Shown: positions 42,496 through 62,508 of the stretch, piece after piece
How positions within the stretch are numbered: position 1 is the stretch's first letter
How the letters are laid out: every line of letters starts with the position of its first letter
Sequence record: NC_041878.1
Strand: one strand, 5' to 3'
Length of the DNA stretch: 64,000 bases
Program-made: the position numbers and the translations under genes
The notes under the pieces: generated by a model
What the model saw: the letters and a program-made list of their open reading frames with translations, nothing else
What the model was told of the DNA's origin: nothing
Databases searched by the model: none

Positions 42496-42676
42496 TTGAC
42501 AAGTGAACCAGGATTATAGTACTATATAAGCAAGCCAGAGAAATGGCCTAGCCCACAGGGTGCGGAGATCCGTCTATTGCTTTTTATTTGAATTTTGGAC
42601 ACAATTCCGCACCCTGTGGGTCAAGGAGTTTCGCCTCCATGTAAAGTATTATGCCAGTACTGCGAACATAATGCAA
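42496..42676. repeat. convergent pair 1 of promoter-hairpin-CCCACAGGGTGCGGA element
   Basis: Plus core 42551-42567, minus core 42606-42621, each behind its own sigma70 promoter. Confidence 0.85.
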
Positions 42677-42703
42677 GGACTTTTTACGATTTTCTTTAAA
42701 AAA

Positions 42704-42846
42704 GTTTCCCCTTCTATATACGTATAAAGGAAGCGTTTAGAGCGTGTCAGATCCTGGGGCTTACAGTTTTGTACTTTATACTTTATAAAGCCGTGTAAAG
42801 CGTCCTATGCGTTCCTTGTACGTGTATACGTATATAGAGAAGGAAA
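42704..42846. repeat. long imperfect inverted repeat
   Basis: CTATATACGTATA 42714-42726 / TATACGTATATAG 42825-42837; AAGGAA/TTCCTT. Confidence 0.7.
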
Positions 42847-42936
42847 AGCCTGTTAGAAAGAATCTTATAAAAACTTATATAAAGTACTTGCAAAGGTTTT
42901 TTGGTGTGATAGTATTAATCCCGTCGAACAGGACAA

Positions 42937-42949
42937 CGCTCTTTAAAAA
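42937..42949 (+). promoter_or_regulatory. boxA-like antitermination element
   Basis: CGCTCTTTAAAAA about 16 nt after a predicted start site. Confidence 0.55.
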
Positions 42950-43052
42950 CTTGCTGGTGAATACTTAAACATGCCTCCAGGTACTTTGAAAAAAGAATCT
43001 GAGAGAATGAAAAAGTACTTGACAGCAAGAATAGAAAGTGTAGAATGTTCAA

Positions 43053-43225
43053 TATCGAAAGGCGGTAAGGTTCGCCGGATGGTAGGAAGCGGTAGCAGGG
43101 CGATAAAGTACTGCTACAGTGATAAGCCGGAAGTGCTATCACAGCGTTATAAAGGTTAACATAACTGTTAACGTCCTATCTACTGCCTTTTGATTCTTTC
43201 AGTACGGTAAAAGGTACGAAAGAAT
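43053..43225 (+). ncRNA. candidate multi-junction small RNA
   Basis: 13-bp closing helix 43055-43067/43181-43193 enclosing an inner helix and three hairpins; promoter TTGACA 43019/TAGAAT 43041. Confidence 0.6.
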
Positions 43226-43343
43226 AAAGATTCAGAAAGTTATCAAAAAGTACTTGACGGACTGAATCGCACGATGTAAGATGTTAAGTAAGCCGAGTGG
43301 CTAACCCAAAATTCAAAATTTAACTTTTAAGAAGGTATATATC

Positions 43344-44021
43344 ATGACTACTACTAACAACGCTAAAGCTACCAAAGTTACCCTGAACTCTATCGTTTTC
43401 GCTCCGGCTCCGGTACTGCGTGAACTGAAAGAAGGTGAAAACTACACCAAAACCGAACTGAAAGCCCACGAAAAAGAAATGGGCGAATATCTCCGCACCA
43501 CGTCGCACGATTTGGCGATGTACCTGGTAAACAAAACCGACAATACTGATACCATTGTCAAACTGTTTGCCGCTACCGCCGAAGCGATCCCTACAGTACT
43601 GGCCGAAGTACTGAAACAGCGTGAAGAAGAAGAAGCCGCTAAACAGGCTGAACGCGAAAAAGCGGAAGAAGAAAAACGTCGCCTCGCTGAACAGGAAGAA
43701 AAAGAACTGCAAGCGAAGAAAGATGAAATGCTTAAACACATGACCGATGTTCTGGGGCTGGATCTGGATGTTGCGAAAGCTGCGGTTGAAACGGTGGCGA
43801 AAAAGCTGAACGTTGGCAACCATACTAAAAACTCTTATGAGCGTGTAACCTGCACCATTGAAGGCAATCAGTACGATGTTCCGGTGCGTGGTAATATGTC
43901 TCAGGCACTGAAAGATCTGGCGGCGAAATATGGTTTCGCTGATGACCGCGATGGATTCATCGAAAAATTCCGCGATGAACCTGCAACTGCTGATGCTGAC
44001 AAAGATACCGCCGAAGCGTAA
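43344..44021 (+). CDS. putative H-NS/MvaT-like nucleoid-associated protein, highly expressed
   Basis: EVLKQREEEEAAKQAE..EMLKHMTDVLGLD resembles the H-NS oligomerisation linker; VRGNMSQALKDL resembles the AT-hook-like loop; optimal codons. Confidence 0.6.
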   Translation: MTTTNNAKATKVTLNSIVFAPAPVLRELKEGENYTKTELKAHEKEMGEYLRTTSHDLAMYLVNKTDNTDTIVKLFAATAEAIPTVLAEVLKQREEEEAAKQAEREKAEEEKRRLAEQEEKELQAKKDEMLKHMTDVLGLDLDVAKAAVETVAKKLNVGNHTKNSYERVTCTIEGNQYDVPVRGNMSQALKDLAAKYGFADDRDGFIEKFRDEPATADADKDTAEA

Positions 44022-44038
44022 TATCAAAAGTAATGCGG

Positions 44039-44060
44039 CAAGGGGGCTAGAAAGCCCCCT
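44039..44060 (+). terminator. GC-rich hairpin, probable terminator
   Basis: AGGGGGCT-agaa-AGCCCCCT; weak U tract. Confidence 0.6.
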
Positions 44061-44170
44061 GAGCCTTTCTAACAGTACTGTAATACCTTTCCTCAAAGTA
44101 CTATTAGAAACGCTTAGAATCAATCCTACAGCGTTTTAAGATGTATACTTATTAAGTGAGAATAAACGCT

Positions 44171-44440
44171 ATGGAACTAAAACCACTTTCTGAACTCCGC
44201 GATAAAAAAACCATTGTCGCCAGGACAATGATCCACACTTCCCCACGTCAAAAGGTTTTATCTGGCTATCTGGTTTTTGTGCTGGATGGTAAACTAATAC
44301 AACGTCGGATCTATGATATGGCCTATAATAGTACTTTTATGAGTGCTATGTATATAGTTTACAAAGGCGTTAACTATGCCGTAGATCTTGCATGTAAGAC
44401 GATTAGCGGGGCTTTCAGCGTCGAAACGTTGAAAGTATAA
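44171..44440 (+). CDS. early hypothetical protein
   Basis: TTAAGTGAGA leader; followed by hairpin terminator 44452-44482. Confidence 0.7.
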   Translation: MELKPLSELRDKKTIVARTMIHTSPRQKVLSGYLVFVLDGKLIQRRIYDMAYNSTFMSAMYIVYKGVNYAVDLACKTISGAFSVETLKV

Positions 44441-44575
44441 GCCTACAATCAAAAGCCCTTAGAAACGTTTCTAGGGGCTTTATATTTGATTTTAAAAAGT
44501 ACTAAGAAAGTACTTGCAATTTATTTTTGAATCTGTAGAATACTCGTTATTGAAACACGTAACGAGATTTAAGAA

Positions 44576-44860
44576 ATGCAAGTAACACTGAACGGATTTA
44601 CTTTTACAAAGAATGTTGATGGTACTGATAACATTCAGTCAGTACTTAAAAACAAAGATAATAAAGCATTAGGCGGGATTGTCAAAGATGCTAAGAAGAT
44701 GGCAAACTTACAACGCCTGAAACGTTCGCCTGATGTTCTGGTATTCCTGGCTAAAGTACAGGAAGAAACTGAAAAAGTTTACTTTGAACAAAAGAAACCA
44801 AAACCTTACAATAAGTACAAAAGGAAATTTAATCCTTGCATTCATTCTATAAATGTGTAG
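44576..44860 (+). CDS. early basic hypothetical protein
   Basis: Own promoter TTGCAA..TAGAAT. Confidence 0.75.
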   Translation: MQVTLNGFTFTKNVDGTDNIQSVLKNKDNKALGGIVKDAKKMANLQRLKRSPDVLVFLAKVQEETEKVYFEQKKPKPYNKYKRKFNPCIHSINV

Positions 44861-44895
44861 AATGTCTTATATCGAAACGCGACGGAGTAAACAAG

Positions 44896-45285
44896 ATGGA
44901 AAGTAAAGCGAAGTTAGAACAATACAGATTAGTACTTGATGTACTGATTCAAATGAAAGATTGTATTGACAAAGATGATACTTATACTACAGTACTGAAT
45001 AAGTCATTCAATCTTTCTCGCTCCCTGGGTATCTGCTGGCATGTATATGTTCACACTCCACCAGCGGAGATCACTGGTATCGGATCGGACTATCTTGAAC
45101 CTGCATTCATTGCGTTAGGGCTTGATCGTGAATATCCGGTTGAATGCCAGGTTGATACTGATTCGCCGCGAATCCTGCACTTTACACAACGTAACCTTTA
45201 CGATCCTGATAACGAGTGCGGAAAGTTGCGGATCAAGTTGGTTAATGATTTGATTCAGTACTTTGAACAAAAGTTATCGCAGTAA
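44896..45285 (+). CDS. early hypothetical protein
   Basis: GGAG RBS, own promoter. Confidence 0.8.
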   Translation: MESKAKLEQYRLVLDVLIQMKDCIDKDDTYTTVLNKSFNLSRSLGICWHVYVHTPPAEITGIGSDYLEPAFIALGLDREYPVECQVDTDSPRILHFTQRNLYDPDNECGKLRIKLVNDLIQYFEQKLSQ

Positions 45286-45305
45286 AAATCTTTACAAAAA
45301 AGAGG

Positions 45306-45486
45306 TTGACTTCGGTTGGCCTCTTATAGTACTATATTAATAAGCCAGAACAAAGGCGTGACCCACAGGGTGCGGAGATCCGTTCAGTGAAAAGATAATG
45401 AATTTTAGATATAACTCCGCACCCTGTGGGTTAAGGAATTTCGCTTCCATGAATAATAATATACCACTGCTGGAAAGTACTGTCAA
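45306..45486. repeat. convergent pair 2 of promoter-hairpin-CCCACAGGGTGCGGAG element
   Basis: Plus core 45361-45377, minus core 45415-45431. Confidence 0.85.
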
Positions 45487-45708
45487 GGAAAAAAACAGGG
45501 GAACTTTCATGTTCCCCCTAAATGCGACAAAGGCATATATCGGACTTTGTGCGAGCTTCGTTGATCGCATGAGTACTATATCACAACGGCCAGGCGAGTG
45601 CAACTATTTGATCTGTGATAAAAATATACTTTCAAACGTGAAAAGTACTTGCAAAGAATGATTAAAGGAGTATACTTAACTTATCGAAACGAACAAGAGG
45701 ATTTAAAA

Positions 45709-45981
45709 ATGGCTAGTTACAGTGCGTCAATGATTGTTAAGGATTTAGCAGGAAAGCCGTGTTTAGCTTGCGGTTCCTTTGGTAACATTGCGATAGATGG
45801 TAGATTATCTATTTCCAGGGCGATAGAGATAGCGGAGGAAAGTTTTAAGAAAGAATCCAAATTTCAAAACAGCGAATACTTGGGATTTGTAATTGAGAAA
45901 ACTTCTCGATTCGTTGAATATCGTAATCCGAGTATTATCGGTAATAAAGAAGTAAAAACTTTTAAAGAACTTGAACGATAA
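45709..45981 (+). CDS. early hypothetical protein
   Basis: GAGG RBS. Confidence 0.8.
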   Translation: MASYSASMIVKDLAGKPCLACGSFGNIAIDGRLSISRAIEIAEESFKKESKFQNSEYLGFVIEKTSRFVEYRNPSIIGNKEVKTFKELER

Positions 45982-46044
45982 TACTTGCAAAGTGGGTAAT
46001 GGTTTAGTACTATTACCCTATCGAAACGAACTGAGGATTTAAAG

Positions 46045-46491
46045 ATGGGAACTCCAGCATGTATCGCAGTAATGAACGACAATAAAGAAGTTACTTGGAC
46101 TTATGTTAACTATGACGGTTATTTAAACGGCGTAGGTAGAATGTTGATCGAGCATTACAACGATCTGTCAATAGCTAAAAAATTAATTTCAATGGGTGAT
46201 ATTTCAACATTGAAGCGAACGATGGATTGCCCCGTTGGTCACTCATTCGCTACACCTGCACCAAATTGCACAGTATTCTATGAGCGGGATCGTGGTGAAG
46301 ATAATGTAAAACCACGTCACGGCGATTATGCTATGTTCCTGCGTTGTAATAAAGGTACAATTAGTTATATCTACACGGATGGACAATGGCACATAGTACG
46401 GGAAACAAGTAAACGCGGTGCAATTTTAGACCGTCATAAATTGTTAGTACTTGGCGAAGTGTTATCCGGTTTATATGATTTTTCGCGTTAA
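46045..46491 (+). CDS. conserved phage hypothetical protein (YVNYDGY..GVG motif)
   Basis: GAGG RBS, own promoter. Confidence 0.85.
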   Translation: MGTPACIAVMNDNKEVTWTYVNYDGYLNGVGRMLIEHYNDLSIAKKLISMGDISTLKRTMDCPVGHSFATPAPNCTVFYERDRGEDNVKPRHGDYAMFLRCNKGTISYIYTDGQWHIVRETSKRGAILDRHKLLVLGEVLSGLYDFSR

Positions 46492-46567
46492 TTAAATTGT
46501 ATATAGTACTTGCAAAATTCTGCGAGTACTATATAATTACTTATATCTTAAACGGGAGAACAAAGAA

Positions 46568-47023
46568 ATGAAAGCTATCGAATTTGAACAGAAAGTAAGA
46601 GAATCCTTTTTGAAGTACTTCCCGAACGGGCATATTCGTTTATCTAAACTTGCTTTAGGTGGCGGCTTACATATTGCTTGCGGCCTGATTGCAAACGTTA
46701 AAGAGATCACCGCAACGATCAGACAAAACGACCCGTTAAACGTTTCTATCTTTATTCATGATAACTATGTATTCAATGATTCAGAAACGGATCTTGATAA
46801 TGTAGTACTTGAATTTGATAATTCTCATGTATCGGTTATTCCTGATAATCCGCACATGTACAGCCAATCGCACAAGATCGCAGCACGTAAAATTAACGCT
46901 GCACCAGAAAAAGCACTGGTAAACCTGGATAAGTATTTTAAACGTGTTAAAGATGTTGTCACAGAGCAAGCGGCATTAAACCGGATTATCAAACAAGATA
47001 CAATCGATCCTAAGTATCTGTAA
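46568..47023 (+). CDS. early hypothetical protein
   Basis: GGAG RBS, AGTACT-dyad promoter. Confidence 0.85.
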   Translation: MKAIEFEQKVRESFLKYFPNGHIRLSKLALGGGLHIACGLIANVKEITATIRQNDPLNVSIFIHDNYVFNDSETDLDNVVLEFDNSHVSVIPDNPHMYSQSHKIAARKINAAPEKALVNLDKYFKRVKDVVTEQAALNRIIKQDTIDPKYL

Positions 47024-47103
47024 AATTATTATCAAAAGTACTTGCAAAATGAATGCGAGTACTTTATAATAAAGTTACATTATTAATCAAGAGGAAGTAA
47101 CAA

Positions 47104-47229
47104 ATGGTCACTATCGAAAAAGTAAAAGAAATGCTGGAAGAACTCCGCGATCAGGGTTTTGTTGTTGCTGATACTGATGACGAATTAGAAGCAGCGGCAG
47201 AAATAGCATTGACCGTTTTAAATAGCTAA
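47104..47229 (+). CDS. small acidic protein (41 aa)
   Basis: GAGG RBS, own promoter; not in ORF track. Confidence 0.65.
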   Translation: MVTIEKVKEMLEELRDQGFVVADTDDELEAAAEIALTVLNS

Positions 47230-47301
47230 TTAAAAATAGTACTTGCATTAATTTGTGAGTACTATATAATTACTTATATCGAAACAGCGGAGTAACTTGC
47301 A

Positions 47302-47529
47302 ATGATTGAATTTCGCAGAACTATGGAAATGTCTATCACTATCACTGACCCACGTTATACTGAGAAAGAGATCGCGGAAGGGTTATCTGACGGCTCAATG
47401 AATATGGGCGAAGAAGATGGCGAAGATGCAGGAAAGATTTTTAATAGTGCATGGGATGAAATCGCTACTATTGATGATCTTCATGTATCGGATGTTATGA
47501 CGCCGGATGTTCAATTTTCAGTGATTTAA
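47302..47529 (+). CDS. small acidic protein
   Basis: GGAG RBS, own promoter. Confidence 0.75.
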   Translation: MIEFRRTMEMSITITDPRYTEKEIAEGLSDGSMNMGEEDGEDAGKIFNSAWDEIATIDDLHVSDVMTPDVQFSVI

Positions 47530-47602
47530 TTATCAAAAGTACTTTGACAATTTTGTTAGAGTACTTTATAATTAACTTACATTAAGCGAGAGGATTTTAA
47601 AA

Positions 47603-48025
47603 ATGTTACAAGTCAGAGGTTATGCGGAAGGTGGTTTCTGTTTCATGTTGGATGATAAAGCGGTATCAGTACATGAAGCATTATTAGCGAATGGGGGTAA
47701 GTTTCATAAGAGAACCATTAACGCTCTTAATCGTAATAACCTGGCGAACGAACAAGATCTGGCAGAGTTTGAAAAGCTGGTAAAGGTTTTACATACTGGC
47801 TTAGATGCCTTTAATGCTCGTAAAGTACTGCGTGATCATTTCAATATTGATGTATTGAAGATTGAGAACTATTATATTTTAACTAGTTCTGAAATTTATG
47901 ATCTCATGAAAGTATATGAGATCTGTAAGTACAAAGTAAGTGTAAAAAGTCCTGCACACTCAACGATGTACTATTTCTTTGAGTACTTAAACCGGAAAGA
48001 TGTTCGCCGCCTGGAAAGAACATAA
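47603..48025 (+). CDS. early hypothetical protein
   Basis: GAGG RBS, own promoter. Confidence 0.8.
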   Translation: MLQVRGYAEGGFCFMLDDKAVSVHEALLANGGKFHKRTINALNRNNLANEQDLAEFEKLVKVLHTGLDAFNARKVLRDHFNIDVLKIENYYILTSSEIYDLMKVYEICKYKVSVKSPAHSTMYYFFEYLNRKDVRRLERT

Positions 48026-48038
48026 TTCAAGAAAGGGG

Positions 48039-48118
48039 TTGACTTCGGTTAGCCCCTTCTGTATACTGTATTCATTGGCAGATAAAGCCGCAAGCCCATA
48101 GGGTGCGGAGGTATGTCT
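48039..48118 (+). ncRNA. promoter-hairpin-CCCATAGGGTGCGGAG element (single)
   Basis: TTGACT-N17-TATACT, GGC-AGATAAA-GCC hairpin, core 48094-48110. Confidence 0.7.
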
Positions 48119-48206
48119 GTAAGAATATAAATTTGAATAAAGTACTTGCAATCTATTTTAAAAGGCGTATACTTATCTATATCGAAACAACACAGAGGAA
48201 AACGAA

Positions 48207-48542
48207 ATGGAACAGACTACCCTGGTAAATGAAGATGCAATCATTGATTGTCTCCTGAATGTAATCCTTAACGCTGGCTATTGTGTAAGCGTGAATGATG
48301 GGGAATGTACTGTTATTAATCGCAGTACTGACAAAGAAGAGATTATGTCTGAGCTTCGCGGTACAGACAGCGATTGGATCAGAATTTATAAACCTGGTGA
48401 AGCCTACCATGTTGGATCTGTTGAACTGATTTACAACAATGGATCGGACGGATTAGATCTTATCAGTAATACAGCGGCAAGTGATTTAGAAGCCCTGGAT
48501 GAATTACTTATTCCAGTATATGAATTGATTGATACGCTGTAA
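48207..48542 (+). CDS. early acidic hypothetical protein
   Basis: GAGG RBS, own promoter. Confidence 0.85.
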   Translation: MEQTTLVNEDAIIDCLLNVILNAGYCVSVNDGECTVINRSTDKEEIMSELRGTDSDWIRIYKPGEAYHVGSVELIYNNGSDGLDLISNTAASDLEALDELLIPVYELIDTL

Positions 48543-48611
48543 ACATTATCAAAAGTACTTGCAATTAGAAAGCGAGTACTTTATAATGATTATATTAAAT
48601 CAGGAGGATAT

Positions 48612-48779
48612 ATGGACGAACTTTTAAAACTCTGGCAACAATTCAGTACTGTATCAGTTAACGATGATGATGAAATTGAAGAATCATTTTTGCACTTTGA
48701 AAAGGGAACAGACAGATTAGAAGTGTGGAAATGGTTTGAGAATCAGAATCCTGATTTTAAAGTATCTGATTTAGTTTAA
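48612..48779 (+). CDS. small protein (55 aa, FLHFEKGTDRLEVWKWFE)
   Basis: AGGAGG RBS; not in ORF track. Confidence 0.75.
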   Translation: MDELLKLWQQFSTVSVNDDDEIEESFLHFEKGTDRLEVWKWFENQNPDFKVSDLV

Positions 48780-48862
48780 TGTAAACATTATCAAAAGTAC
48801 TTTACTTATTTTGTAGAGTACTTTATAATGATTATAGTTAATTAAGAGAGAGGGTTTAAGAA

Positions 48863-49042
48863 ATGAAATTATATGCTTATGCGTCTAATAGTGGTGAAGC
48901 TATTGCAGTTGGTAGATCTGAGCGTGGTGCTAAATCTACTGCTACTAAAAACAAAAGTACTGAAATAGGTTATATCAGTACTATTAACAATATGTACATT
49001 CCTACTCATAAAAAAATTAATAATAAGTGGGTATCAATTTAA
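48863..49042 (+). CDS. small basic protein (59 aa)
   Basis: GAGGG RBS, own promoter; not in ORF track. Confidence 0.65.
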   Translation: MKLYAYASNSGEAIAVGRSERGAKSTATKNKSTEIGYISTINNMYIPTHKKINNKWVSI

Positions 49043-49114
49043 TGTATATAAGTACTTGCAAGTTATTTGTGAGTACTATATAATGATTGTACTTTAAGTG
49101 AGAGGAAAGAAAAC

Positions 49115-49486
49115 ATGAATCCAGTATATGAAATCCAGGCAGATATTTTCAACACGTTCTCTGAGATCGTTACACGTGGTCATGATGAGGAATCATACAA
49201 AAGAGAACAGGCCAGAATCCAGAATGATATTAACCGCCTTAAATTAGTGCGGGATCGTTATGCCTGTAATACTCTTATGACTAGCATGTTTTGCAATGTC
49301 ATGTTGCGTAAAATGTGCCTGGCTTATCGTTATGAGGGTATTCTTTATTGTACGGCTAATAATGTCCCTGGCCGTCCAAATACTGACTACTTACATACAT
49401 TAAACTTAACATCGGATCAATGGGATAGTTTAAAACAATTCCATGTATGGATCAGTACTGGCGATGTATACGCTCCAGTGCCTTAA
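49115..49486 (+). CDS. early hypothetical protein
   Basis: GAGG RBS. Confidence 0.8.
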   Translation: MNPVYEIQADIFNTFSEIVTRGHDEESYKREQARIQNDINRLKLVRDRYACNTLMTSMFCNVMLRKMCLAYRYEGILYCTANNVPGRPNTDYLHTLNLTSDQWDSLKQFHVWISTGDVYAPVP

Positions 49487-49532
49487 TTAACTATAGGGGA
49501 ACATTGTTCCCCTTTTTAAGTGAGATCCGCCT

Positions 49533-49787
49533 ATGAATATTTTTTATCAAACTAACAGGTTATGCGTTGCATTTGATTGTGATTCTGATAAAATACAATG
49601 CGTAATCTACCGGAAAGGAACGGCGGTATATGATAACTGGAAAGTACTACAATCATATACAATGCGGCGTAAAGGTTTTAAACGCCTGGATAATCGAACA
49701 CAGAAAGCGGCCTTGCGACAAATGATCAAAGCAATGCGGAACCGTCAAACAATGGCTTTAAACATTGCACTTAACAGTAAGGAATGA
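49533..49787 (+). CDS. early basic hypothetical protein
   Basis: TTAAGTGAGA leader. Confidence 0.7.
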   Translation: MNIFYQTNRLCVAFDCDSDKIQCVIYRKGTAVYDNWKVLQSYTMRRKGFKRLDNRTQKAALRQMIKAMRNRQTMALNIALNSKE

Positions 49788-49791
49788 TACA

Positions 49792-49950
49792 ATGATTCAT
49801 GATGTGGTTATTACTCTGACAGTACAATCTGATAATGAAGTACTGACTAACGACGAAATTATAAAGGCGATGGAAGAAAAACTATCCCTGATGAAAGCCG
49901 AACCGCAAATGGTTAAAGAGCTTGCGGAATCCGCAGAAGTGTTTGATTAA
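49792..49950 (+). CDS. small acidic protein
   Basis: AAGGA RBS. Confidence 0.65.
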   Translation: MIHDVVITLTVQSDNEVLTNDEIIKAMEEKLSLMKAEPQMVKELAESAEVFD

Positions 49951-49962
49951 TTAAAAAAGGGG

Positions 49963-55365: not shown

Positions 55366-55484
55366 AATTCGATTGGGGGCTTATATGCCCCCATAATTAA
55401 GTAAGGATAATACCATATGCCAATTACTCCAGTTGTTTTGTTAATTGTGGTGTGTATAATAATTTTTATATTGTTGAGGCCGCG

Positions 55485-55727
55485 ATGAAAAAGATGGTAA
55501 TTGATAATACACAATTACGCATACACTTTAAAGCAAGTACTAAAGTACTGGACAAAGCATTAAGGGTTGTGCGAGAATATACAAAAGGTGAAGTTAGACC
55601 GAGGCGATTAGGTTGTGGATTGTTTGAAGTACTGGACGTTTCGCATAATGAGCGAATCGTAATTCAAAACAGTAAACTTAACTTAATGACTCATGAACAA
55701 TATAATAAGTTCGTTGAACGCCGTTGA
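55485..55727 (+). CDS. putative ParE-like toxin family protein
   Basis: RPRRL..LFEVLDV..ERIV..LMTHEQYNK resembles the ParE-like toxin family C-terminal (L/V)M(T/S)HE.YN. Confidence 0.5.
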   Translation: MKKMVIDNTQLRIHFKASTKVLDKALRVVREYTKGEVRPRRLGCGLFEVLDVSHNERIVIQNSKLNLMTHEQYNKFVERR

Positions 55728-55783
55728 CATAATCCCCTAAATATGATTATAATAAATTTATAGTCATTAGGGGATTTTTTATT

Positions 55784-56302
55784 ATGCCAGGAACATTCCG
55801 CAGTAAAAATAGTGCTACCCTAGCAGGTCACTCTGATAAATGGAGTAACTCTAATCGTAGTGCGTCAAGTCATGATGCTGGTCAAGGTAGTAGAGGAAGC
55901 CGAAACCAGGGAACAGGTATTCAAGGGAAACTAAACACTATGCCATCACAAGGCGTAGACACTTCCAAAATGAAACCAGAAGAAAAGTTAAAGTACTTTA
56001 AATCGTTGGGGTTAATGCCTGGTGCAGAACCTACACCAGAACCAGAAGTACAACCTGAACCAAAACCAGAACGTAACAAAGTACAAGCATTAACGCAAGA
56101 CCTACAGAAAGTATTTGCTAACACTCCAAACTATCTGCATAGTATTGTACAGCAGCTTAAAGAAGTGCCACCAGCACAATTTAAAAAAGCTGTATTCGCG
56201 GCGTATCGTGCAATGCAAGAAGCTACAGCACAAGCAAACGTAGATCCTAAAGCAGTACTTAAACATATAGAAGATGCAATTAACCAAAGTATCTACGATT
56301 AA
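55784..56302 (+). CDS. hypothetical protein with disordered S/G-rich N-terminus and PE linker
   Basis: RBS AGGGG inside a long hairpin (55731-55776) that contains TAAATA. Confidence 0.85.
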   Translation: MPGTFRSKNSATLAGHSDKWSNSNRSASSHDAGQGSRGSRNQGTGIQGKLNTMPSQGVDTSKMKPEEKLKYFKSLGLMPGAEPTPEPEVQPEPKPERNKVQALTQDLQKVFANTPNYLHSIVQQLKEVPPAQFKKAVFAAYRAMQEATAQANVDPKAVLKHIEDAINQSIYD

Positions 56303-56365
56303 TATTTGACAGTACTCAATTCATCTGATAGTATTAAGTTATTCCAAACAACAAGGTACTATCAA

Positions 56366-56704
56366 ATGAAAAGAATTTTATTAGTCGGACTTCTGTTTGC
56401 AAGTACTGTTAACGCTCAAATGTTAACTTGCTCTAACAGTACTCTTTCTTTTCGTAATAACGATGGAAGTTATAGCGAAAAGGTAGCAACAAAACTTTCA
56501 AACATCAACGTAGAAGTACTGGAACAAGCTATAACGTTCTATGCTGGTGGAATTGATAAACTGGAATTTTGGAAAGATTACAATGAGTATCGTAATGATA
56601 CTGGTAAGGTAGTTCGCTCAGGTGATACTTTTTCATTGTATACCACTATTCCAACTGATACAAATAAAATGCAGCCTGTTAAAGTTGATTATGTCTGCAA
56701 ATAA
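56366..56704 (+). CDS. putative exported protein
   Basis: Signal peptide MKRILLVGLLFASTVNA. Confidence 0.8.
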   Translation: MKRILLVGLLFASTVNAQMLTCSNSTLSFRNNDGSYSEKVATKLSNINVEVLEQAITFYAGGIDKLEFWKDYNEYRNDTGKVVRSGDTFSLYTTIPTDTNKMQPVKVDYVCK

Positions 56705-56718
56705 ATTCAAATAAAAGG

Positions 56719-56798
56719 TTGACTTCGGTCGGCCTTTTTTGTTATACTTACTTTATTGGCAGATAAGCCGTTAGCCCATTGGGTGCGGAGTTATGTCA
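56719..56798 (+). ncRNA. promoter-hairpin-CCCATTGGGTGCGGAG element
   Basis: TTGACT..TATACT, GGC-AGATAA-GCC hairpin, core 56774-56790. Confidence 0.7.
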
Positions 56799-56946
56799 TT
56801 TTTAAGTACTTTCTATTTTGAAAATATTATACAAAAACTTATAAAAAGTCCTTGCAGATAATTCTGATTCTGCTATTATAACCACATCAAGACGGGGCAA
56901 CGTCTTAGAAAACAAAATTCAAATATTAAGTGAGAGGCAGTACAAA

Positions 56947-57294
56947 ATGACTAAATCAATCAAAGTTAAAGCTACTAAATCAGTTCAGGCAAACAACGTA
57001 GAAAACATTAAAAGACTGCCTATTGGTACTGTAGTAGTTCATAACTATGGTGAGTTTACCCACGGTGTAATTGTAGGTCATGCAGAACATGCTTACCAGG
57101 TTTATTTTAGTGCTGATATGTCACCGATGCTTCCAAAGTATCAGGCTAATACCGATGAAGCAATTAAAGCACGTATGCGTACTATTACCCTGGGCAAAGG
57201 ATTCTTTGTAAGTCGCTTCAAAACAATTGAAGCAGTTCGTGAAGCACAACGCAAATATAAAAATCGTGGTCTGGATCTCGAATCAGCAGCGTAA
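56947..57294 (+). CDS. early hypothetical protein
   Basis: GAGG RBS. Confidence 0.8.
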   Translation: MTKSIKVKATKSVQANNVENIKRLPIGTVVVHNYGEFTHGVIVGHAEHAYQVYFSADMSPMLPKYQANTDEAIKARMRTITLGKGFFVSRFKTIEAVREAQRKYKNRGLDLESAA

Positions 57295-57384
57295 TTGAAT
57301 TTAAAAAGGAGTTGACAACAGTTGGCTCCTTTGCTATACTACCCATAAGAACTTAATTGAAGTACTTTTTAAAGGCATATCATC

Positions 57385-57603
57385 ATGAGAAACATTTTAG
57401 AAGAACTCCTTAAAGAACCAACCGAAGAAGAAATGCAAGCCAGTGCAGTACTGCGTGATCTCTGTATTCAAAATGAGCTTGAGTTTCCTGAACAATTGTT
57501 CATGTTGCAGTATTTTGCAGGTATTGAACCAGGTCTGATCGTTTCAAAGGTGAACGCATTAAACACGCCTTTGATTGAAAATGCAATACACGTAATGCAC
57601 TAA
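57385..57603 (+). CDS. small acidic protein
   Basis: After terminator-promoter cassette 57305-57340. Confidence 0.7.
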   Translation: MRNILEELLKEPTEEEMQASAVLRDLCIQNELEFPEQLFMLQYFAGIEPGLIVSKVNALNTPLIENAIHVMH

Positions 57604-57620
57604 TTAATTCTACAAAGTAC

Positions 57621-57698
57621 TTGACTCCGGTTGAGTACTTTAGTATTATATATTCATTGGCAGATAAGCCGTTACCTACAAGGTGCATAATTGTATCT
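57621..57698 (+). ncRNA. promoter-hairpin-CCTACAAGGTGC element (compensatory variant)
   Basis: TTGACT-N17-TATTAT; CCT/AGG replaces CCC/GGG. Confidence 0.65.
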
Positions 57699-57811
57699 GT
57701 ATAAAAGAAAATATAAATTCAAATAAAAAACTTGCATTTATCCGTCAGTACTGTATAATGATTTACATGGATTAGGGAATGGCCTTAATCATTTTAAGTG
57801 AGAATACTATC

Positions 57812-58381
57812 ATGAAATTTGAAGAACTGAACGAGCAACAAAAAGCTAGAGCACTTGACAAACATCGTTATATTAACGTTGATTATGACGAATGGCATGA
57901 TTTTGTCAAAGACGATCATCATTCGAAACTGGAAGCCGTTGGTTTTGAAGGCGTAGAGTCGCGTTACAGTGGTTTTTGTTCCCAGGGCGACGGGGCAAGT
58001 TTTCTTGCAAGTAACGTTGACATTGAGAAGTTTCTGCGTTCACAAAAACGTTGGACGCATTATCGTGCCTTGCATGAGTTTATTCGTATCAATGAGATCA
58101 CGGCGAAAGTAGTTGCGTTACCTTCTCATTACGTACACTACAATACAACTCAAGCGGAGTTATCAGGCGATTGGTATATTGATTTTACTCCTAAGCAGGA
58201 AGCACTATATAAAGAACTCGAAGAAGAGATCGACGCATATATCACACAAGCGGGTAAAGATTATTACGCTGATCTTGAAACTGCGTACTACGATCTTACC
58301 AGTGACGAACAAGTAGAACAAACAATCATCGCGAATGATTTAGATTTTGAAGAAACAGATCATTCAGTAACTTATCTTTGA
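57812..58381 (+). CDS. conserved mobile-element protein (YSGFCSQGDGASF motif)
   Basis: TTAAGTGAGA leader; motif recalled from ICE/phage proteins loosely annotated as antitoxins. Confidence 0.7.
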   Translation: MKFEELNEQQKARALDKHRYINVDYDEWHDFVKDDHHSKLEAVGFEGVESRYSGFCSQGDGASFLASNVDIEKFLRSQKRWTHYRALHEFIRINEITAKVVALPSHYVHYNTTQAELSGDWYIDFTPKQEALYKELEEEIDAYITQAGKDYYADLETAYYDLTSDEQVEQTIIANDLDFEETDHSVTYL

Positions 58382-58585
58382 CAAGTACTAAAACTTTATG
58401 ATATAGTACTCGCATAGAAAAAAACACGAGCAAACAACTATGCGAGTACTTAAATCACATAACGATATAATTTTCGCTACTTATGGCGATTGTTATATGG
58501 TTAAAAAAGGGAGGATGAAAATAGTTTGTAATAATCCCGTAATTGCTTTATACTATTACTGTAAACTTTTAAGTGAGAATATAAA

Positions 58586-58918
58586 ATGAGAAAACCTAAC
58601 GTAGAAATTCTTTGTGATTCGCATCATGGTGTACATATCCCGTCCATCATGATTCAACGTCTGGTAGATGCAGGTTGGCGAAACATTCCCGCCGATGCCG
58701 TAGAAGTACTTTCTTCCGTAGACAATGAAGGTTATTGGGATTGTTGGGAAGAAGTACTTAACAATGCAGAATGGCATGATGCAAGTACTGGTCAAGTATT
58801 CAAGTTGCACCAGGACGGCGATCTGTTTGCTTATTGCAAGGATAGTATGACTCCGCAAGAGTATCATCATATGTTTGGTGAATATCCAGACTGGTACAAT
58901 CAGGAAGAAGAAGCATAA
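58586..58918 (+). CDS. conserved phage hypothetical protein (DSHHGVHIP..W.CWEEVL..QDGDLF)
   Basis: TTAAGTGAGA leader. Confidence 0.8.
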   Translation: MRKPNVEILCDSHHGVHIPSIMIQRLVDAGWRNIPADAVEVLSSVDNEGYWDCWEEVLNNAEWHDASTGQVFKLHQDGDLFAYCKDSMTPQEYHHMFGEYPDWYNQEEEA

Positions 58919-58935
58919 TTAAATTTAAAAAGTAC

Positions 58936-59015
58936 TTGACTCCGGTCAGGTACTTTGCTATTATGTATACATAGCAAGAACAATGCTTTAGCCCATAGGG
59001 TGCAGGAGTGTAGTT
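58936..59015 (+). ncRNA. promoter-hairpin-CCCATAGGGTGCAGGAG element
   Basis: TTGACT-N17-TATTAT; AGCA-AGAACAA-TGCT hairpin; core 58991-59008. Confidence 0.7.
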
Positions 59016-59127
59016 ATAGTATAAGGATGTAGTACTGAAAGAAATATAAAGTTAAATGAAAAATTCCCTTGCTTTCTTTCTTTCGTGTGGTATACTTTAG
59101 TTATTGAAACAGAGCGGAGTTTGAAAA

Positions 59128-59370
59128 ATGTCTAAATCAGGAATCGAATTTAAAGTGCGGAAATGGTCTGAGCATGGTGCAAGACGCCCATTCGATGTAG
59201 TAGCACTGGATCACGACAACAACAAACAGCACTACCAGCCAGGCTGCACTTTCAGTACTGAGGATGGGGCAGAGCGTCACGCTCAAGTACTGGCACAGCG
59301 TATTAAAGACAATGCAAACACTATTAAGTTTATTCGTGATTGCTGGCCTGTAGACGGCGGGATCGAATAA
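59128..59370 (+). CDS. early hypothetical protein
   Basis: GGAG RBS. Confidence 0.75.
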   Translation: MSKSGIEFKVRKWSEHGARRPFDVVALDHDNNKQHYQPGCTFSTEDGAERHAQVLAQRIKDNANTIKFIRDCWPVDGGIE

Positions 59371-59449
59371 AAATTCAAATGAAAAAGTACTGGACAATCT
59401 AAGTTTAGTACTTTATAATTTAAATACAAAACGAATTGAGGAACTGATT

Positions 59450-60337
59450 ATGTTGAAAATGTATAAAGGTATCAATGGCTTGGCACTGAAAGCTAACCGT
59501 CCACTGAACAGAACTGAACTGTTAGAAGTTGTACCTTCAATTTTCGCTATCGAAGGGCATTCTTCACGTAGTTCACGTTTTGCACCAGTTGCTACTATCG
59601 ACGTGGTAGACCGCCTGGCACAAGAAAACTACTTCCCGATGTACGCGATTCAATCGCAGACTCGCGATGTATCTAAACGTGATTATACTAAACATATGAT
59701 CCGTTTTCGTAAGCCTGGCGATCGTGAAGGTGAAGCAAATGAAATCATCCTGGTTAACGCCAACGATGGTACAAGTGCGTATCAGTTAATGGCAGGTCAA
59801 TTCCGTTTTGTTTGTTCGAACGGTTTAGTTATGGGTGAAATGTCTCATAACACTAAGATCTACCATAAAGGTACTGACATTATGGATGATGTTATTGAAG
59901 GCGTTTATACAGTAGTTAAAGACTTTGACGAAATCGAACGTTATAAAAAGGAAATGAAACAGATCCAGTTAAGTACTGCACAACGTGATTCATTCGCAAT
60001 GACGGCGTACATCATGAAAGAAGGTTTACCAGAAAACGGTGATTGGGCGAATGCTGTATATCAACCACGTTTGTTACTTTCTGGTAAAGATCTTAACACG
60101 GATGATCGTTATGATAACAGTCTGTATAGTACTTTTAACACTGTACAGCAACACATGATGGCTGGTGGTCAGCGTGGATATAACCCGCAAACTGGTCGCC
60201 GTCGCTCAAGCCGTGAAGTAACTAACATCGATAAAAACATCGAACTGAATAGTAACTTATGGAAAGCTGCAATGAACATGGTTGACCAGTACGATTTACT
60301 GAAAAACGCAGATCCAGAAGAGATTCTGCAATTTTAA
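59450..60337 (+). CDS. DUF932-family protein
   Basis: RSSRF...RDYTKHMIRFR...EIILVNANDGTSAYQLMAGQFRFVCSNGL. Confidence 0.9.
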   Translation: MLKMYKGINGLALKANRPLNRTELLEVVPSIFAIEGHSSRSSRFAPVATIDVVDRLAQENYFPMYAIQSQTRDVSKRDYTKHMIRFRKPGDREGEANEIILVNANDGTSAYQLMAGQFRFVCSNGLVMGEMSHNTKIYHKGTDIMDDVIEGVYTVVKDFDEIERYKKEMKQIQLSTAQRDSFAMTAYIMKEGLPENGDWANAVYQPRLLLSGKDLNTDDRYDNSLYSTFNTVQQHMMAGGQRGYNPQTGRRRSSREVTNIDKNIELNSNLWKAAMNMVDQYDLLKNADPEEILQF

Positions 60338-60412
60338 AAGCTAAAAGGGGTTGACAATTGGTTAGCCCCTAAGCTATACTCATATCTGACAAGTAAACGG
60401 AGTAACGGAACC

Positions 60413-60751
60413 ATGAGCATGAATTTTTTCATCATGACCAATACAACGAAAGACGGTCACACAGAGTACGGCAATACTGAGTATGTAATTGTAGGGCAGG
60501 ATCGTTTAGGTCGCCGTTACCGTCTGGATTCATCAGCATTGACGAACGCAGATAAAACTGATCGTGAATGCCGTGATATACAGAACCGTCGCATTATGCG
60601 TATGCTTCAAAGTATCGCGTATGGTCAGAAGGTCGATCTTAATAACTGGACTGAGATCGAACCAGCATACGAATCTGAGGCTTTCTATAAGTTAGATACT
60701 AAGAAGCGTATCACGCTGGAACAAAAACACGTTGAGATGTACGGTGTTTAA
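60413..60751 (+). CDS. early hypothetical protein
   Basis: GGAG RBS after cassette. Confidence 0.75.
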   Translation: MSMNFFIMTNTTKDGHTEYGNTEYVIVGQDRLGRRYRLDSSALTNADKTDRECRDIQNRRIMRMLQSIAYGQKVDLNNWTEIEPAYESEAFYKLDTKKRITLEQKHVEMYGV

Positions 60752-60954
60752 CTTATAGTACTGCAAGATCCATGCCAGGGCAACCAAATAACGGTTGCCC
60801 TTTTTTGTATTCAGCGTATAATAAATTTCGGTTAAATGTTGATTTATATCAAGTTTCTTATTGCAGGTTTTGTAAATCATGCTACGGTGCTATTGACAGA
60901 TTAGGAGTAGTCTGAGATAATAGCCCTACGTTGAGCGAAGCGAGTAATAATAAT

Positions 60955-61185
60955 ATGATCAGTGTTGGCAGCAGTGAATTAGAAGCATTAAAGATCCGTT
61001 GGTATCAATTAGCCATTGACGGCAAGCCAGTTATCGGAGAAGATAAGAAGTTGTTCGACTCTTTAAACTGTTACGTACAGGACGAATTAAAAAAGGCATA
61101 TCTCTTAGGCGTTGGCGACGAACAAGAAACCTGGATGATACCACAAAATCAATCCAGTACTAATAAAGTTAGTCAAAAACAATAA
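60955..61185 (+). CDS. small protein, paralog of 62077..62253
   Basis: RWYQL..LFDSL..ELKKAY..G. Confidence 0.7.
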   Translation: MISVGSSELEALKIRWYQLAIDGKPVIGEDKKLFDSLNCYVQDELKKAYLLGVGDEQETWMIPQNQSSTNKVSQKQ

Positions 61186-61268
61186 TCCAAATTCTTCTAA
61201 AAAGGGTTGACTTAGGTTAGCCCTTTTTGCTATACTCTTTTTACACCAACAAATAAGAGTACTTGACA

Positions 61269-61616
61269 ATGTTAGACATTTATATCAGAAGTGACTTAGT
61301 GCCAGATGGTTGTGATGAATGCGGTACTCCAAAAGAAAAAACAGAGTACTACATTATTGCTGAATCAGAAACCGGCCAGCGTCTTAGATTAGAAAGTGTT
61401 TCCATTGTGAACCGCGATTATACGGATGAACAATGTGAAGCGTATCTTCAACCAACTGTAGATAAAATTAAAAATCATTTAGCTGGTGGCGGTAAACTTA
61501 ATCCTGATTATTGGTGCGAGATCGATCCACGTTACGGATCTAAACGTTACCAGGATTTAGATAGTACTGGCTTCTTCTATCAACGCGAGAAACGCGAAGA
61601 TACTTATCGCGATTAA
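61269..61616 (+). CDS. early hypothetical protein
   Basis: After cassette 61201-61236; PRYGS motif. Confidence 0.75.
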   Translation: MLDIYIRSDLVPDGCDECGTPKEKTEYYIIAESETGQRLRLESVSIVNRDYTDEQCEAYLQPTVDKIKNHLAGGGKLNPDYWCEIDPRYGSKRYQDLDSTGFFYQREKREDTYRD

Positions 61617-61815
61617 GTAAACACCAATTCAAGATAATTTCGAGTACTTGACAAATCAAATACCAGTACTCGAAATTTTCATTTAGTGATCAGCAGTTGT
61701 CTAAATTTTCGTGAGTGCGTGAACGTGTATACGAATGCGTATGATATGTGCGTTATATACTTGCATATGTATCTGTATACGTGTATACTATCTATAATGA
61801 ATAAGGAGATACAAC

Positions 61816-62007
61816 ATGACCAAAGCACAGTTTGAAAGTAAAGTCGATGATGTTATCAACTTAGTAACTCATTCCAGTATCACAATACCAGCAGCAGTTG
61901 AAAAGGTATGCGGCGAACCCATCAATAAAGAGAATAGCGAACTGCAATTCTCATTACAAGATGCAGTTGAAAAAGAATTGCATCCTGAATGGTGGATTAA
62001 ACAATAA
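61816..62007 (+). CDS. small hypothetical protein
   Basis: TAAGGAG RBS. Confidence 0.75.
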   Translation: MTKAQFESKVDDVINLVTHSSITIPAAVEKVCGEPINKENSELQFSLQDAVEKELHPEWWIKQ

Positions 62008-62076
62008 ACTTTGTACTTGACAACTATATATCAGTACTGATATACTAACCACACATTAAGCGAGAAAGGAAACATC

Positions 62077-62253
62077 ATGGTACAGGTAGATTTGTCAGAA
62101 CTCAGAACGAAATGGTACAACCTGGGGAAAGCGGGTACTGCAATTGCTGGTACTGATGCAGAACTGTTTAACTCACTCGATCCGTGGCAAAAACGGGAAC
62201 TCCGCAACGCCTACGTTGAAGGAACTACGGAAGCCCTTTCAACCGTAGCATAA
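62077..62253 (+). CDS. small protein (58 aa), paralog of 60955..61185
   Basis: AAGGA RBS; KWYNL..LFNSL..ELRNAY..G; not in ORF track. Confidence 0.75.
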   Translation: MVQVDLSELRTKWYNLGKAGTAIAGTDAELFNSLDPWQKRELRNAYVEGTTEALSTVA

Positions 62254-62328
62254 CTCTAACAGGCTATCTTATCATAAAAGTGTTGGCAAAGTCCAGCACT
62301 TTTTTTCGTTTTGAAGCAAAAAAATTCC

Positions 62329-62508
62329 TTGACCTTCCCTGCGATATTTGAGAGAATACCTACAAGCCAGAACAAAGGCGTAGCCCACCGGGTGCATAGG
62401 CACGTCCAAAATTCAGTACTCAAATTTTAGATAGATCTCCGCACCCTGTGGGTCAGACCGTTACACCGGTTTATGTACTTATTATACATCAACCACGAAT
62501 CAATGCAA
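62329..62508. repeat. convergent pair 3 of promoter-hairpin-core element
   Basis: Plus core 62383-62395 (CCCACCGGGTGC), minus core 62437-62453. Confidence 0.85.

What the first reader, a model, noticed from the sequence alone, without database searches (positions are those of the whole stretch)
42551..62453. Three convergent pairs of the element have an identical 68-bp core spacing
Seen: the distance from the first C of the plus-strand CCC to the last G of the minus-strand GGG is 68 in all three pairs (42552-42620, 45362-45430, 62384-62452). The roughly 37-nt AT-rich spacers differ in sequence but share GTCCAAAATTC/ATCTAAAATT-like half-motifs. The 5' hairpins also differ between pairs, so this is not simple recent duplication. 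Inference: a geometric constraint at DNA or complex level. Options are (a) a bidirectional replication origin in which two convergent transcripts form R-loops and prime both leading strands across an AT-rich unwinding element (T4 origins are promoter plus downstream unwinding element), (b) deliberate head-on RNA polymerase stalling, or (c) a dimeric protein bridging the two cores.
Basis: partly seen in the sequence, partly recalled or inferred. Interest (0 to 1): 0.82.

Follow-up and report, generated by a model that had tools for sequence, protein, structure and literature searches.

The report
Head-to-head early promoter cassettes, jumbo phage
The three "pairs" are head-to-head copies of a previously undescribed promoter-plus-leader cassette found only in the 22-kb terminal repeat of jumbo phage CBB and its relatives. 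Their 37-base gap is conserved but not fixed, and nothing points to a replication origin.

Summary
The window is the last 64 kb of Pectobacterium phage vB_PcaM_CBB, and positions 41545-64000 are its 22,456-bp direct terminal repeat (DTR). Three convergent pairs each span exactly 69 bp from core to core (coordinate difference 68, spacer 37 nt).

The "element" is a 12-copy cassette found only in the DTR. It consists of a sigma-70-type promoter, a 5'-terminal RNA stem-loop with strong covariation, and an almost invariant ~28-nt box starting about +21. The box occurs in 68 phage records, all Rak2-like jumbo phages, and matches no Rfam family or paper.

Across 13 genomes, 17 of 26 pairs keep the 68 spacing despite very different spacers. 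The other nine measure 79, 86 or 90, and each carries an inserted Fur-box-like palindrome. CBB pair 1's own orthologue in Serratia phage BF has an exact 18-bp insertion.

So the spacing is a conserved default, not a fixed geometry. The spacers are not unusually AT-rich, and the two arms do not co-evolve.

Best reading, by inference: face-to-face immediate-early promoters form a promoter-proximal checkpoint or interference module. Function remains untested. Moderately interesting; a new variant of known kinds.

The parts
41545..64000 (.). Right copy of the 22,456-bp direct terminal repeat of phage CBB. All 12 cassette copies lie inside it.
   Evidence: 100% identity to KU574722 and an annotated 'redundant repeat' 1-22456. 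The offset of 41544 makes the repeat end exactly at window base 64000; no copies in 1-41544.
42496..42579 (+). Pair 1, rightward cassette. -35 TTGACA 42496-42501; -10 TACTAT 42520-42525; 5' hairpin 42534-42547; box 42552-42579 (core 42552-42567).
42568..42604 (.). Pair 1 spacer, 37 nt, GC 0.30. No AGTACT and no Fur-like box.
42593..42676 (-). Pair 1, leftward cassette. -35 TTGCAT 42676-42671; -10 CATAAT 42653-42648 with an upstream TG; hairpin within 42641-42622; box 42620-42593.
   Evidence: The promoter is retained in GAP32, BF and Yen9-03 although its sequence changes.
45306..45389 (+). Pair 2, rightward cassette. -35 TTGACT 45306-45311, embedded in a stem-loop at about 45300-45323; -10 45330-45335; hairpin 45344-45357; box 45362-45389.
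45378..45414 (.). Pair 2 spacer, 37 nt, GC 0.24.
45403..45486 (-). Pair 2, leftward cassette. -35 TTGACA 45486-45481; -10 TATATT 45463-45458 with TG; hairpin 45448-45435; box 45430-45403. A minus-strand terminator-like hairpin at 45518-45497 precedes it.
62329..62411 (+). Pair 3, rightward cassette, the most degenerate copy. -35 TTGACC; -10 GAGAAT; hairpin 62366-62379; box 62384-62411 (core has 3 mismatches).
62400..62436 (.). Pair 3 spacer, 37 nt, with the AGTACT palindrome at its centre (62415-62420). Identical in GAP32.
62425..62509 (-). Pair 3, leftward cassette. -10 TATAAT 62486-62481; hairpin 62470-62457; box 62452-62425.
48039..48122 (+). Single cassette. The -35 sits inside a terminator-like hairpin. 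A second, AGTACT-flanked promoter follows at 48141.
49963..50040 (+). Single cassette with a short leader and no stable 5' hairpin.
51705..51845 (-). Single antisense cassette. It runs into hairpins and a bidirectional terminator (51738-51715), giving a candidate RNA of about 100 nt with no ORF. An orthologous copy exists in at least five other phages.
56719..56802 (+). Single cassette.
57621..57702 (+). Diverged single cassette found only by the covariance model (26 bits).
58936..59019 (+). Diverged single cassette found by the covariance model (42.8 bits).

Best explanation
Each half of a pair is one copy of an immediate-early transcription cassette for host RNA polymerase. The cassette has a sigma-70-type promoter, a short stem-loop at the very 5' end of the RNA, and an almost invariant ~28-nt box (CCCAyaGGGTGCGGAG plus about 12 nt) at roughly +21 to +48. 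About 14-19 bp beyond the core of the box there is usually an obstacle. In half of the single copies it is the AGTACT palindrome. In sister genera it is a Fur-box-like operator. In the CBB pairs it is the opposing cassette. I infer that the cassette is a promoter-proximal checkpoint. Polymerase that has just made hairpin plus box is held, or recognised by an unknown factor, until the obstacle is removed. In a pair, two such units face each other across 37 bp, so the polymerases or a protein at the centre block each other. Any read-through RNA then folds the box into a 16-17-bp duplex with its inverted partner. The pair would therefore act as a mutual-interference switch or insulator on early transcription in the terminal repeat, not as an origin. 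Shown here: the cassette anatomy, RNA-level selection on the hairpin, restriction to the repeat, and the spacing classes. Inferred: transcription from both strands, pausing or blockage, and the biological role.
For: All 12 copies have a sigma-70-like promoter, and 11 of them have its -10 ending 25-28 nt upstream of the core; the 50013 copy has 21. Leftward promoters keep their -35, -10 and TG across genera while their sequences change. The 5' hairpin covaries: all 4 pairs show double changes, with a score of 0.365 against 0.119 +/- 0.012 in shuffles (0/500) and 0.03-0.14 in slid controls. Copies are confined to the repeat in CBB (12 against 0 in the adjacent 41.5 kb) and in E. coli phage vB_Ec-M-J (10 inside the annotated DTR, none in the next 10 kb). 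The box occurs in 68 phage records, all Rak2-like. AGTACT lies 14-24 nt after the core in 24 of 52 singles against 5% background. In the pair spacers where one search scored a Fur-like box, its centre lies 39 nt from a core start, so its edge is 14 nt after the core. The half-spacer of the 68 class is 18.5 nt. Many genes downstream of cassettes have their own proximal AGTACT-flanked promoter, so the cassette promoter is not simply the gene's promoter. One antisense copy is a stand-alone unit of about 100 nt ending at a terminator in six genomes.
Against: There are no transcript, footprint or pause data for any Rak2-like phage. AGTACT is about 14-fold over-represented across the whole window, and only half the singles have it at that offset. 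CBB pairs 1 and 2 have no AGTACT or Fur-like box. The polymerase-footprint arithmetic (about 18 bp ahead of the active site) comes from established knowledge, not from a test here. The CCC/GGG mini-hairpin in the box is invariant, so it gives no evidence of structure. Whether the box acts as RNA or as DNA is unresolved.
Confidence: 0.4

Rival explanations
1. Sense/antisense RNA control of the ColE1 RNA I/RNA II type. The leftward promoter makes a short structured RNA fully complementary to the first ~110 nt of the rightward transcript. Pairing, or RNase III cleavage of the duplex, sets how much downstream message survives. The spacing then only reflects inheritance of a folded unit.
For: Predicted start sites are about 110 bp apart. 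Both RNAs fold into three stem-loops with z-scores of -3.4 to -7.1. In the pairs the box is almost fully base-paired (P unpaired 0.00-0.20), against 0.21-0.49 in singles. Relatives have A-run/hairpin/A-run modules at the rightward -35 that read as terminators on the minus strand.
Against: In CBB the minus-strand terminators are weak or absent for pairs 1 and 3. For pair 2 the hairpin's G-T pairs become mismatches on the minus strand. This model does not explain why the spacer length is held, nor why single copies carry the same box.
Confidence: 0.2
2. Bidirectional replication origin. Convergent transcripts form R-loops that prime leading strands across an AT-rich unwinding element.
For: Phages of the T4 superfamily use promoter-dependent origins (established knowledge). 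An iteron-like cluster (TAGATGG/TAGACGG repeats, 42229-42353) lies 200-320 bp left of pair 1 in a highly conserved non-coding stretch. Cumulative GC skew turns near 42 kb.
Against: Spacer AT content is ordinary for this repeat. Convergent transcription overwinds the intervening DNA. Relatives insert a Fur-type repressor site into the putative unwinding element. Iterons accompany only pair 1. The skew change coincides with the switch in gene orientation.
Confidence: 0.08
3. The functional object is the 69-bp imperfect palindrome itself. Candidates are an RNase III processing hairpin in early mRNA, a DNA cruciform, or the site of a symmetric protein bridging the two cores.
For: The arms are 15-17 bp perfect inverted repeats. 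Related phages encode a T7 0.7-like kinase annotated as stimulating RNase III.
Against: The arms of a pair are no more alike than arms from different pairs (post-core 6.1 vs 6.4 of 12, p = 0.77). The symmetry is therefore a by-product of two copies matching one consensus. A 37-nt loop is unfavourable for cruciform extrusion. This model does not explain the conserved leftward promoters.
Confidence: 0.12
4. There is no special function of pairing. An ancestral inversion placed two recombination-prone promoter/terminator cassettes (PeSL-like) head to head. The 68 spacing simply persists because small indels are rare.
For: The cassettes resemble PeSL terminator/early-promoter modules that shuffle genes in T4-like phages (PMC2839356, PMC4122927). 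My rough estimate from the indels is only about 3 expected small indels over the whole tree of 37-nt spacers.
Against: Pairs sit at the same positions (about 1 kb and about 3.5 kb into the repeat) in four genera. Leftward promoters are maintained. There are 17 pairs without a single 1-5-bp length change while spacer sequences fall to about 50% identity. The only length changes bring in a recognisable operator.
Confidence: 0.15

Closest known systems
PeSL (promoter-early stem-loop) cassettes of T4-type phages (Arbiol 2010; Comeau 2014)
   Same: Repeated composite modules of a stem-loop/terminator and a near-consensus sigma-70 early promoter. They flank small ORFan genes in plastic regions. Several CBB cassettes have the -35 TTGAC inside a terminator-like hairpin.
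   Different: As far as I read those papers (term searches of PMC4122927 and the abstract of PMC2839356), PeSLs are not described with a conserved transcribed box or a covarying 5' RNA hairpin. They are also not described as fixed-distance head-to-head pairs or as confined to a terminal repeat.
Face-to-face promoters with transcriptional interference (coliphage 186 pR/pL) and ColE1 RNA I/RNA II antisense pairs
   Same: Two promoters fire toward each other over 60-110 bp. The 5' RNAs are complementary and structured.
   Different: Here both RNAs carry the same invariant box. The unit is present three times per repeat. No target gene function or antisense terminator is established. This comparison rests on my own knowledge of those systems.
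Leader recognition sites for elongation control (lambda nut / rrn boxB-boxA, HK022 put, RfaH ops)
   Same: A short hairpin plus a conserved linear motif sits just downstream of strong promoters at the head of early transcription units. The hairpin has purine-rich loops (GCGAAA, AGAACAA).
   Different: No boxA in any copy. A true boxA with its own hairpin sits elsewhere, at 42937. The box does not match ops or put. One copy is a terminated ~100-nt RNA, where cis antitermination would be pointless.
Host-takeover / pre-early modules in long terminal repeats (SPO1, T5)
   Same: Many small genes of unknown function with individual strong host-type promoters in a 10-22-kb direct terminal repeat that probably enters the cell first.
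   Different: To my knowledge no equivalent conserved post-promoter box or convergent pairs are described there.

Membership tests
PeSL promoter/terminator cassette | Near-consensus sigma-70 early promoter | tested here: met
   8-11 of 12 hexamer matches with 17-18 bp spacing for all 12 copies.
PeSL promoter/terminator cassette | Stem-loop/terminator fused to the promoter | tested here: inconclusive
   Present at 45300, 48032, 49956 and 56716 (-35 inside the hairpin). Absent at pair 1 and pair 3 rightward promoters.
PeSL promoter/terminator cassette | Mediates gene shuffling between close relatives | not tested
   No indel-junction analysis was done between CBB and GAP32.
lambda nut / rrn antitermination leader | boxA (CGCTCTTA / TGCTCTTTAACAA) next to a boxB hairpin | tested here: not met
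   No boxA-like sequence within -30..+120 of any of the 12 cores. The only good boxA is at 42937, outside the cassettes.
Antisense RNA pair (ColE1-type) | Convergent promoters with overlapping transcripts | tested here: met
   Met at sequence level only. Promoters are predicted and conserved on both strands, with about 110 nt of overlap.
Antisense RNA pair (ColE1-type) | Discrete antisense RNA ended by a terminator | tested here: inconclusive
   No convincing minus-strand terminator for CBB pairs 1 and 3, and a weak one for pair 2. Clearer in GAP32 and BF.
T4-type R-loop origin (promoter + downstream unwinding element) | Exceptionally easily melted segment downstream of the promoter | tested here: not met
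   Spacer GC percentiles are 0.09-0.34 among all 37-mers of the repeat.
T4-type R-loop origin (promoter + downstream unwinding element) | Replication starts there | not testable with these tools
   Needs marker-frequency or nascent-strand data.
Fur-regulated promoter | Fur box (GATAATGATAATCATTATC) | tested here: not met
   No site with up to 3 mismatches in the window, and none near the CBB pairs at up to 5 mismatches. Met in pairs of BF, Yen9-03, KP13-7, RaK2, Hallingskeid and one metagenomic genome.
Any Rfam family | Covariance-model match | tested here: not met
   Only 4 tRNAs at gathering score. Only sub-threshold generic hairpin hits at E<=10 over 41400-46000.

The most novel reading that the evidence does not exclude
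The box marks a new kind of promoter-proximal checkpoint on the first DNA a jumbo phage injects. Host polymerase would be parked after about 36-40 nt with a hairpin-plus-box RNA, then released by removal of an obstacle 14-19 bp ahead. That obstacle is an opposing polymerase, an AGTACT-binding factor or, in sister genera, host Fur. Those phages would then read the host's iron state at the moment of entry.
Probability: 0.2. Interest if true: 0.8.

Novelty: new variant of a known kind. Interest (0 to 1): 0.55.

Why it matters
Rak2-like jumbo phages (CBB, GAP32, RaK2, 121Q and about 60 others) are candidates for phage therapy and biocontrol. Nothing is known about how their ~20-kb terminal repeats are expressed. 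A 28-nt non-coding box that stays nearly invariant across genera sharing little other DNA identity must be read by something. The Fur-box insertions in relatives suggest a concrete, testable link between host iron status and the first phage transcripts. The result also removes a tempting but unsupported origin assignment.

Tried and rejected
- **Rfam.** A gathering-threshold scan of the whole window and a permissive scan of 41400-46000 returned nothing beyond tRNAs and noise.
- **Literature.** A search for the motif found only unrelated primers. A search for transcriptomics of this clade found none. The CBB and fEgEco12 papers do not mention the element in the passages a term search returned.
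- **E. coli genomes.** No match to the box, so it is not an obvious host-RNA mimic at that sensitivity.
- **Memory-only comparisons.** I compared the box with CRISPR repeats (I-E/I-F), ToxI, CsrA sites, RegB GGAG sites and ops, and dropped each. The needed residues (GGA, GGAG, the ops T) are not conserved across copies.
- **Mini-ORF after GGAG.** An AUG is present in only some copies.
- **Downstream genes.** Pfam and PHROGs gave unknown function for all nine genes downstream of cassettes.
- **Ungapped RNAalifold.** It missed the 5' hairpin, so a covariance-model realignment was needed.
- **Long-range folding.** Global folding of 260-nt minus-strand RNAs was uninformative for terminators.
- **Failed or skipped steps.** One model search failed on an argument limit. 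I did not fetch the remaining 292 kb of the CBB genome, so "repeat-only" rests on the 64-kb window, five other genomes and an even BLAST place count.


Full report
**Where the window comes from.** A 4-kb query around the first two pairs matches Pectobacterium phage vB_PcaM_CBB (KU574722, 378,379 bp) at 100% identity. That record annotates bases 1-22456 as a redundant terminal repeat. The coordinate offset is 41544, so the repeat ends exactly at window base 64000. The window is therefore the last 64 kb of the record, and 41545-64000 is the right-hand copy of the repeat. The CBB paper inferred the repeat from doubled read depth and PFGE. It mentions only three RpoD-like promoters in the repeat and nothing resembling this element. 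A related coliphage has restriction-verified ~21-kb repeats.

**Checking the observation.**
That is 69 bp inclusive, with a 37-nt spacer.
- The 16-mer core with up to 3 mismatches occurs 10 times against 0.07 expected.
- A covariance model adds two diverged copies, with cores at 57675 and 58992. All 12 copies lie in the repeat, and none lies in the 41.5 kb of unique sequence to its left.
- One correction: the rightward hairpins of pairs 2 and 3 are identical.
- The spacers are not notably AT-rich for this DNA, falling at percentiles 0.09-0.34.

**What the element is.**
- Every copy has a sigma-70-type promoter matching 8-11 of 12 hexamer positions. In 11 copies the -10 ends 25-28 nt before the core; in the 50013 copy it ends 21 nt before. 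The core therefore starts near +21.
- A short stem-loop with a purine-rich loop (GAGAAA, GCGAAA, AGAACAA, AGATAA) lies between the start site and the core.
- I aligned 93 distinct copies from twelve loci. All four stem pairs show double compensatory changes (GC, UA, CG, AU, GU). The covariation score is 0.365, against 0.119 +/- 0.012 in shuffles (0 of 500 reach it) and 0.03-0.14 when partners are slid. This alignment was fitted to the model, which favours the structure. The hairpin is nevertheless visible by eye with seven or more different stem sequences. It is the one feature with direct evidence of selection at the RNA, or single-strand, level.
- The core CCCAyaGGGTGC is essentially invariant and is followed by GGAG and about 12 more conserved bases (aTGTATCTAta). 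The CCC/GGG mini-hairpin never varies informatively, so it says nothing about structure.
- There is no Rfam match, no paper with the motif and no E. coli genomic match.

**Distribution.**
- A 32-nt query finds the box in 68 phage records. All are Rak2-like jumbo phages (Asteriusvirus, Alcyoneusvirus, Mimasvirus, Eneladusvirus and relatives).
- In Klebsiella phage Muenster and E. coli phage vB_Ec-M-J the hits fall inside annotated terminal repeats.
- In vB_Ec-M-J, all 10 model hits lie inside the 21,525-bp repeat and none in the next 10 kb.
- The hits cluster in a stretch of about 16-19 kb in BF, Yen9-03, KP13-7 and Hallingskeid.

**The spacing test.** I collected 26 convergent pairs from 13 genomes.
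- Seventeen have exactly 68. These include the pair about 3.5 kb into the repeat in four genera, with spacers that share little beyond the box tails.
- Three have 79, four have 86 and two have 90. Every one of these nine carries a Fur-box-like palindrome, which includes AATGATAATCATT, the centre of the E. coli Fur consensus. Where one search scored that box in a pair spacer, its centre lies 39 nt from a core start.
- The orthologue alignment of pair 1 is decisive. CBB and GAP32 differ from Serratia BF and Yersinia fHe-Yen9-03 by one clean 18-bp insertion of that palindrome in otherwise colinear, well-conserved sequence.
- CBB, GAP32 and the Asteriusvirus pairs have no such box.
- So 68 is a strongly conserved default, but the geometry can be broken to admit a protein site.
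- Judging from the indels in the flanking alignment, I roughly estimate about three small indels expected across the tree of 37-nt spacers, and none is seen. This is suggestive of constraint but not overwhelming.

**What does not hold the spacing.** The arms of a pair are no more alike than arms from different pairs. Identity is 6.1 vs 6.4 of 12 in the post-core tail (p = 0.77) and 13.9 vs 13.4 of 16 in the core. The palindrome is therefore a by-product of two copies each matching the family consensus. This argues against a selected extended hairpin, a cruciform or a symmetric bridging dimer.

**Clues to mechanism.**
1. The leftward promoters are real by conservation. Their -35, -10 and upstream TG persist while the surrounding bases change, yet the repeat has essentially no leftward genes.
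2. One leftward single copy (51789) is present in six genomes. It runs into a hairpin with a U-rich tail 40-60 nt after the core, making a stand-alone RNA of about 100 nt. The box is therefore not merely an mRNA leader.
3. The repeat has a second promoter class, AGTACTTGCAA-N9-GAGTACT-TATAAT, placed directly before genes and lacking the cassette. Cassette promoters often sit 50-330 nt upstream of one of these.
4. Something recognisable tends to lie 14-19 bp beyond the core. AGTACT lies 14-24 nt away in 24 of 52 singles against 5% background. The Fur-like box edge is at 14 nt. The midpoint of the 37-nt spacer is at 18.5 nt.
5. That distance is about the reach of an elongating polymerase ahead of its active site (established knowledge, not tested here). 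This suggests a common design in which polymerase is stopped just after transcribing hairpin plus box.
6. In the pairs, any transcript that does read through folds its box into a 16-17-bp duplex (P unpaired 0.00-0.20, against 0.21-0.49 in singles).

**Verdict.** The pairs are head-to-head copies of a repeat-specific immediate-early cassette. Most likely they form a mutual-interference or checkpoint module on host-polymerase transcription (confidence 0.4). ColE1-like antisense control is the main rival (0.2). Other rivals are a neutral relic of cassette inversion (0.15), a palindrome-based RNA or DNA site (0.12) and an origin (0.08). The origin idea has only circumstantial support: an iteron-like cluster near pair 1 only, and a GC-skew turn that coincides with the change of gene orientation. 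It conflicts with the ordinary AT content and with repressor sites inserted into the spacer in relatives.

**Comparison with known systems.** The promoter-in-hairpin modules match the PeSL concept of T4-type phages. The conserved transcribed box, the fixed-distance pairs and the restriction to the repeat are additions. No boxA is present in any copy, so the cassette is not a nut or rrn-type site. I rate it a new variant of known kinds, with interest 0.55.

Noticed in passing
window 42925-42949 (+); GAP32 L002 4174; Serratia BF L121 1398; Yen9-03 L122 707; KP13-7 L123 12019: A near-perfect rrn/lambda-type boxA (CGCTCTTTAAAAA; CGCTCTTTAACAA in BF and Yen9-03) is preceded by a small covarying hairpin. 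It sits about 20 nt after a promoter and about 320 nt downstream of pair 1, at the same position in four phages. It looks like a Nus-factor antitermination site at the head of the first operon of the repeat.
   Followed up: partly
whole window, e.g. 46505-46541, 47037-47070, 48554-48587: The palindrome AGTACT occurs 276 times against 19.5 expected, in unique sequence as well as in the repeat. It flanks both the -35 and the -10 of a repeat-specific promoter class (AGTACTTGCAA-N9-GAGTACT-TATAAT) and forms the stems of many hairpins.
   Followed up: partly
window 42189-42470: A gene-less stretch left of pair 1 is among the best-conserved DNA between genera (about 77% identity to Serratia BF). It holds iteron-like TAGATGG(A/C)TA / TAGACGG repeats at 42229-42353 and a hairpin with a compensatory change (CTGG..CCAG against CTAG..CTAG). 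It also holds consensus TTGACA and TATAAT hexamers only 4 bp apart, and a minus-strand TTGCAA-16-TATTAT promoter.
   Followed up: partly
L123 10120-11930, L127 3099-4475, L124 19378-20255, L007 6984-8383: Alcyoneusvirus phages (KP13-7, RaK2), Erwinia phage Hallingskeid and a metagenomic relative carry clusters of Fur-box-like sites (3-5 mismatches of 19). These lie in and around the leftmost pairs of their repeats, well above shuffle expectation. CBB and GAP32 have none.
   Followed up: partly
window 48032-48067, 49956-49991, 56716-56748, 45497-45518: Compact terminator-promoter fusions. A GC-rich stem-loop with a TTCG-type loop contains the -35 TTGAC, and its U-rich tail runs into the -10. 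This resembles the PeSL modules of T4-like phages.
   Followed up: partly
window 35817-41085 (-): Seven leftward genes abut the repeat boundary. Of the four I scanned, three are Kelch-repeat beta-propeller proteins and one is a Laminin_G_3/ConA-like lectin. Relatives annotate similar genes as RCC1-like at the same place.
   Followed up: partly
window 45337-45510 (-): The annotated CDS CBB_7 (record 3793-3966) lies across pair 2 and its promoters and is probably not a gene. GAP32 annotates nothing at the equivalent site.
   Followed up: no
window 4422-6172 (+): Four tRNA genes (Cys, Met, Met, Ala) lie in the unique region.
   Followed up: no
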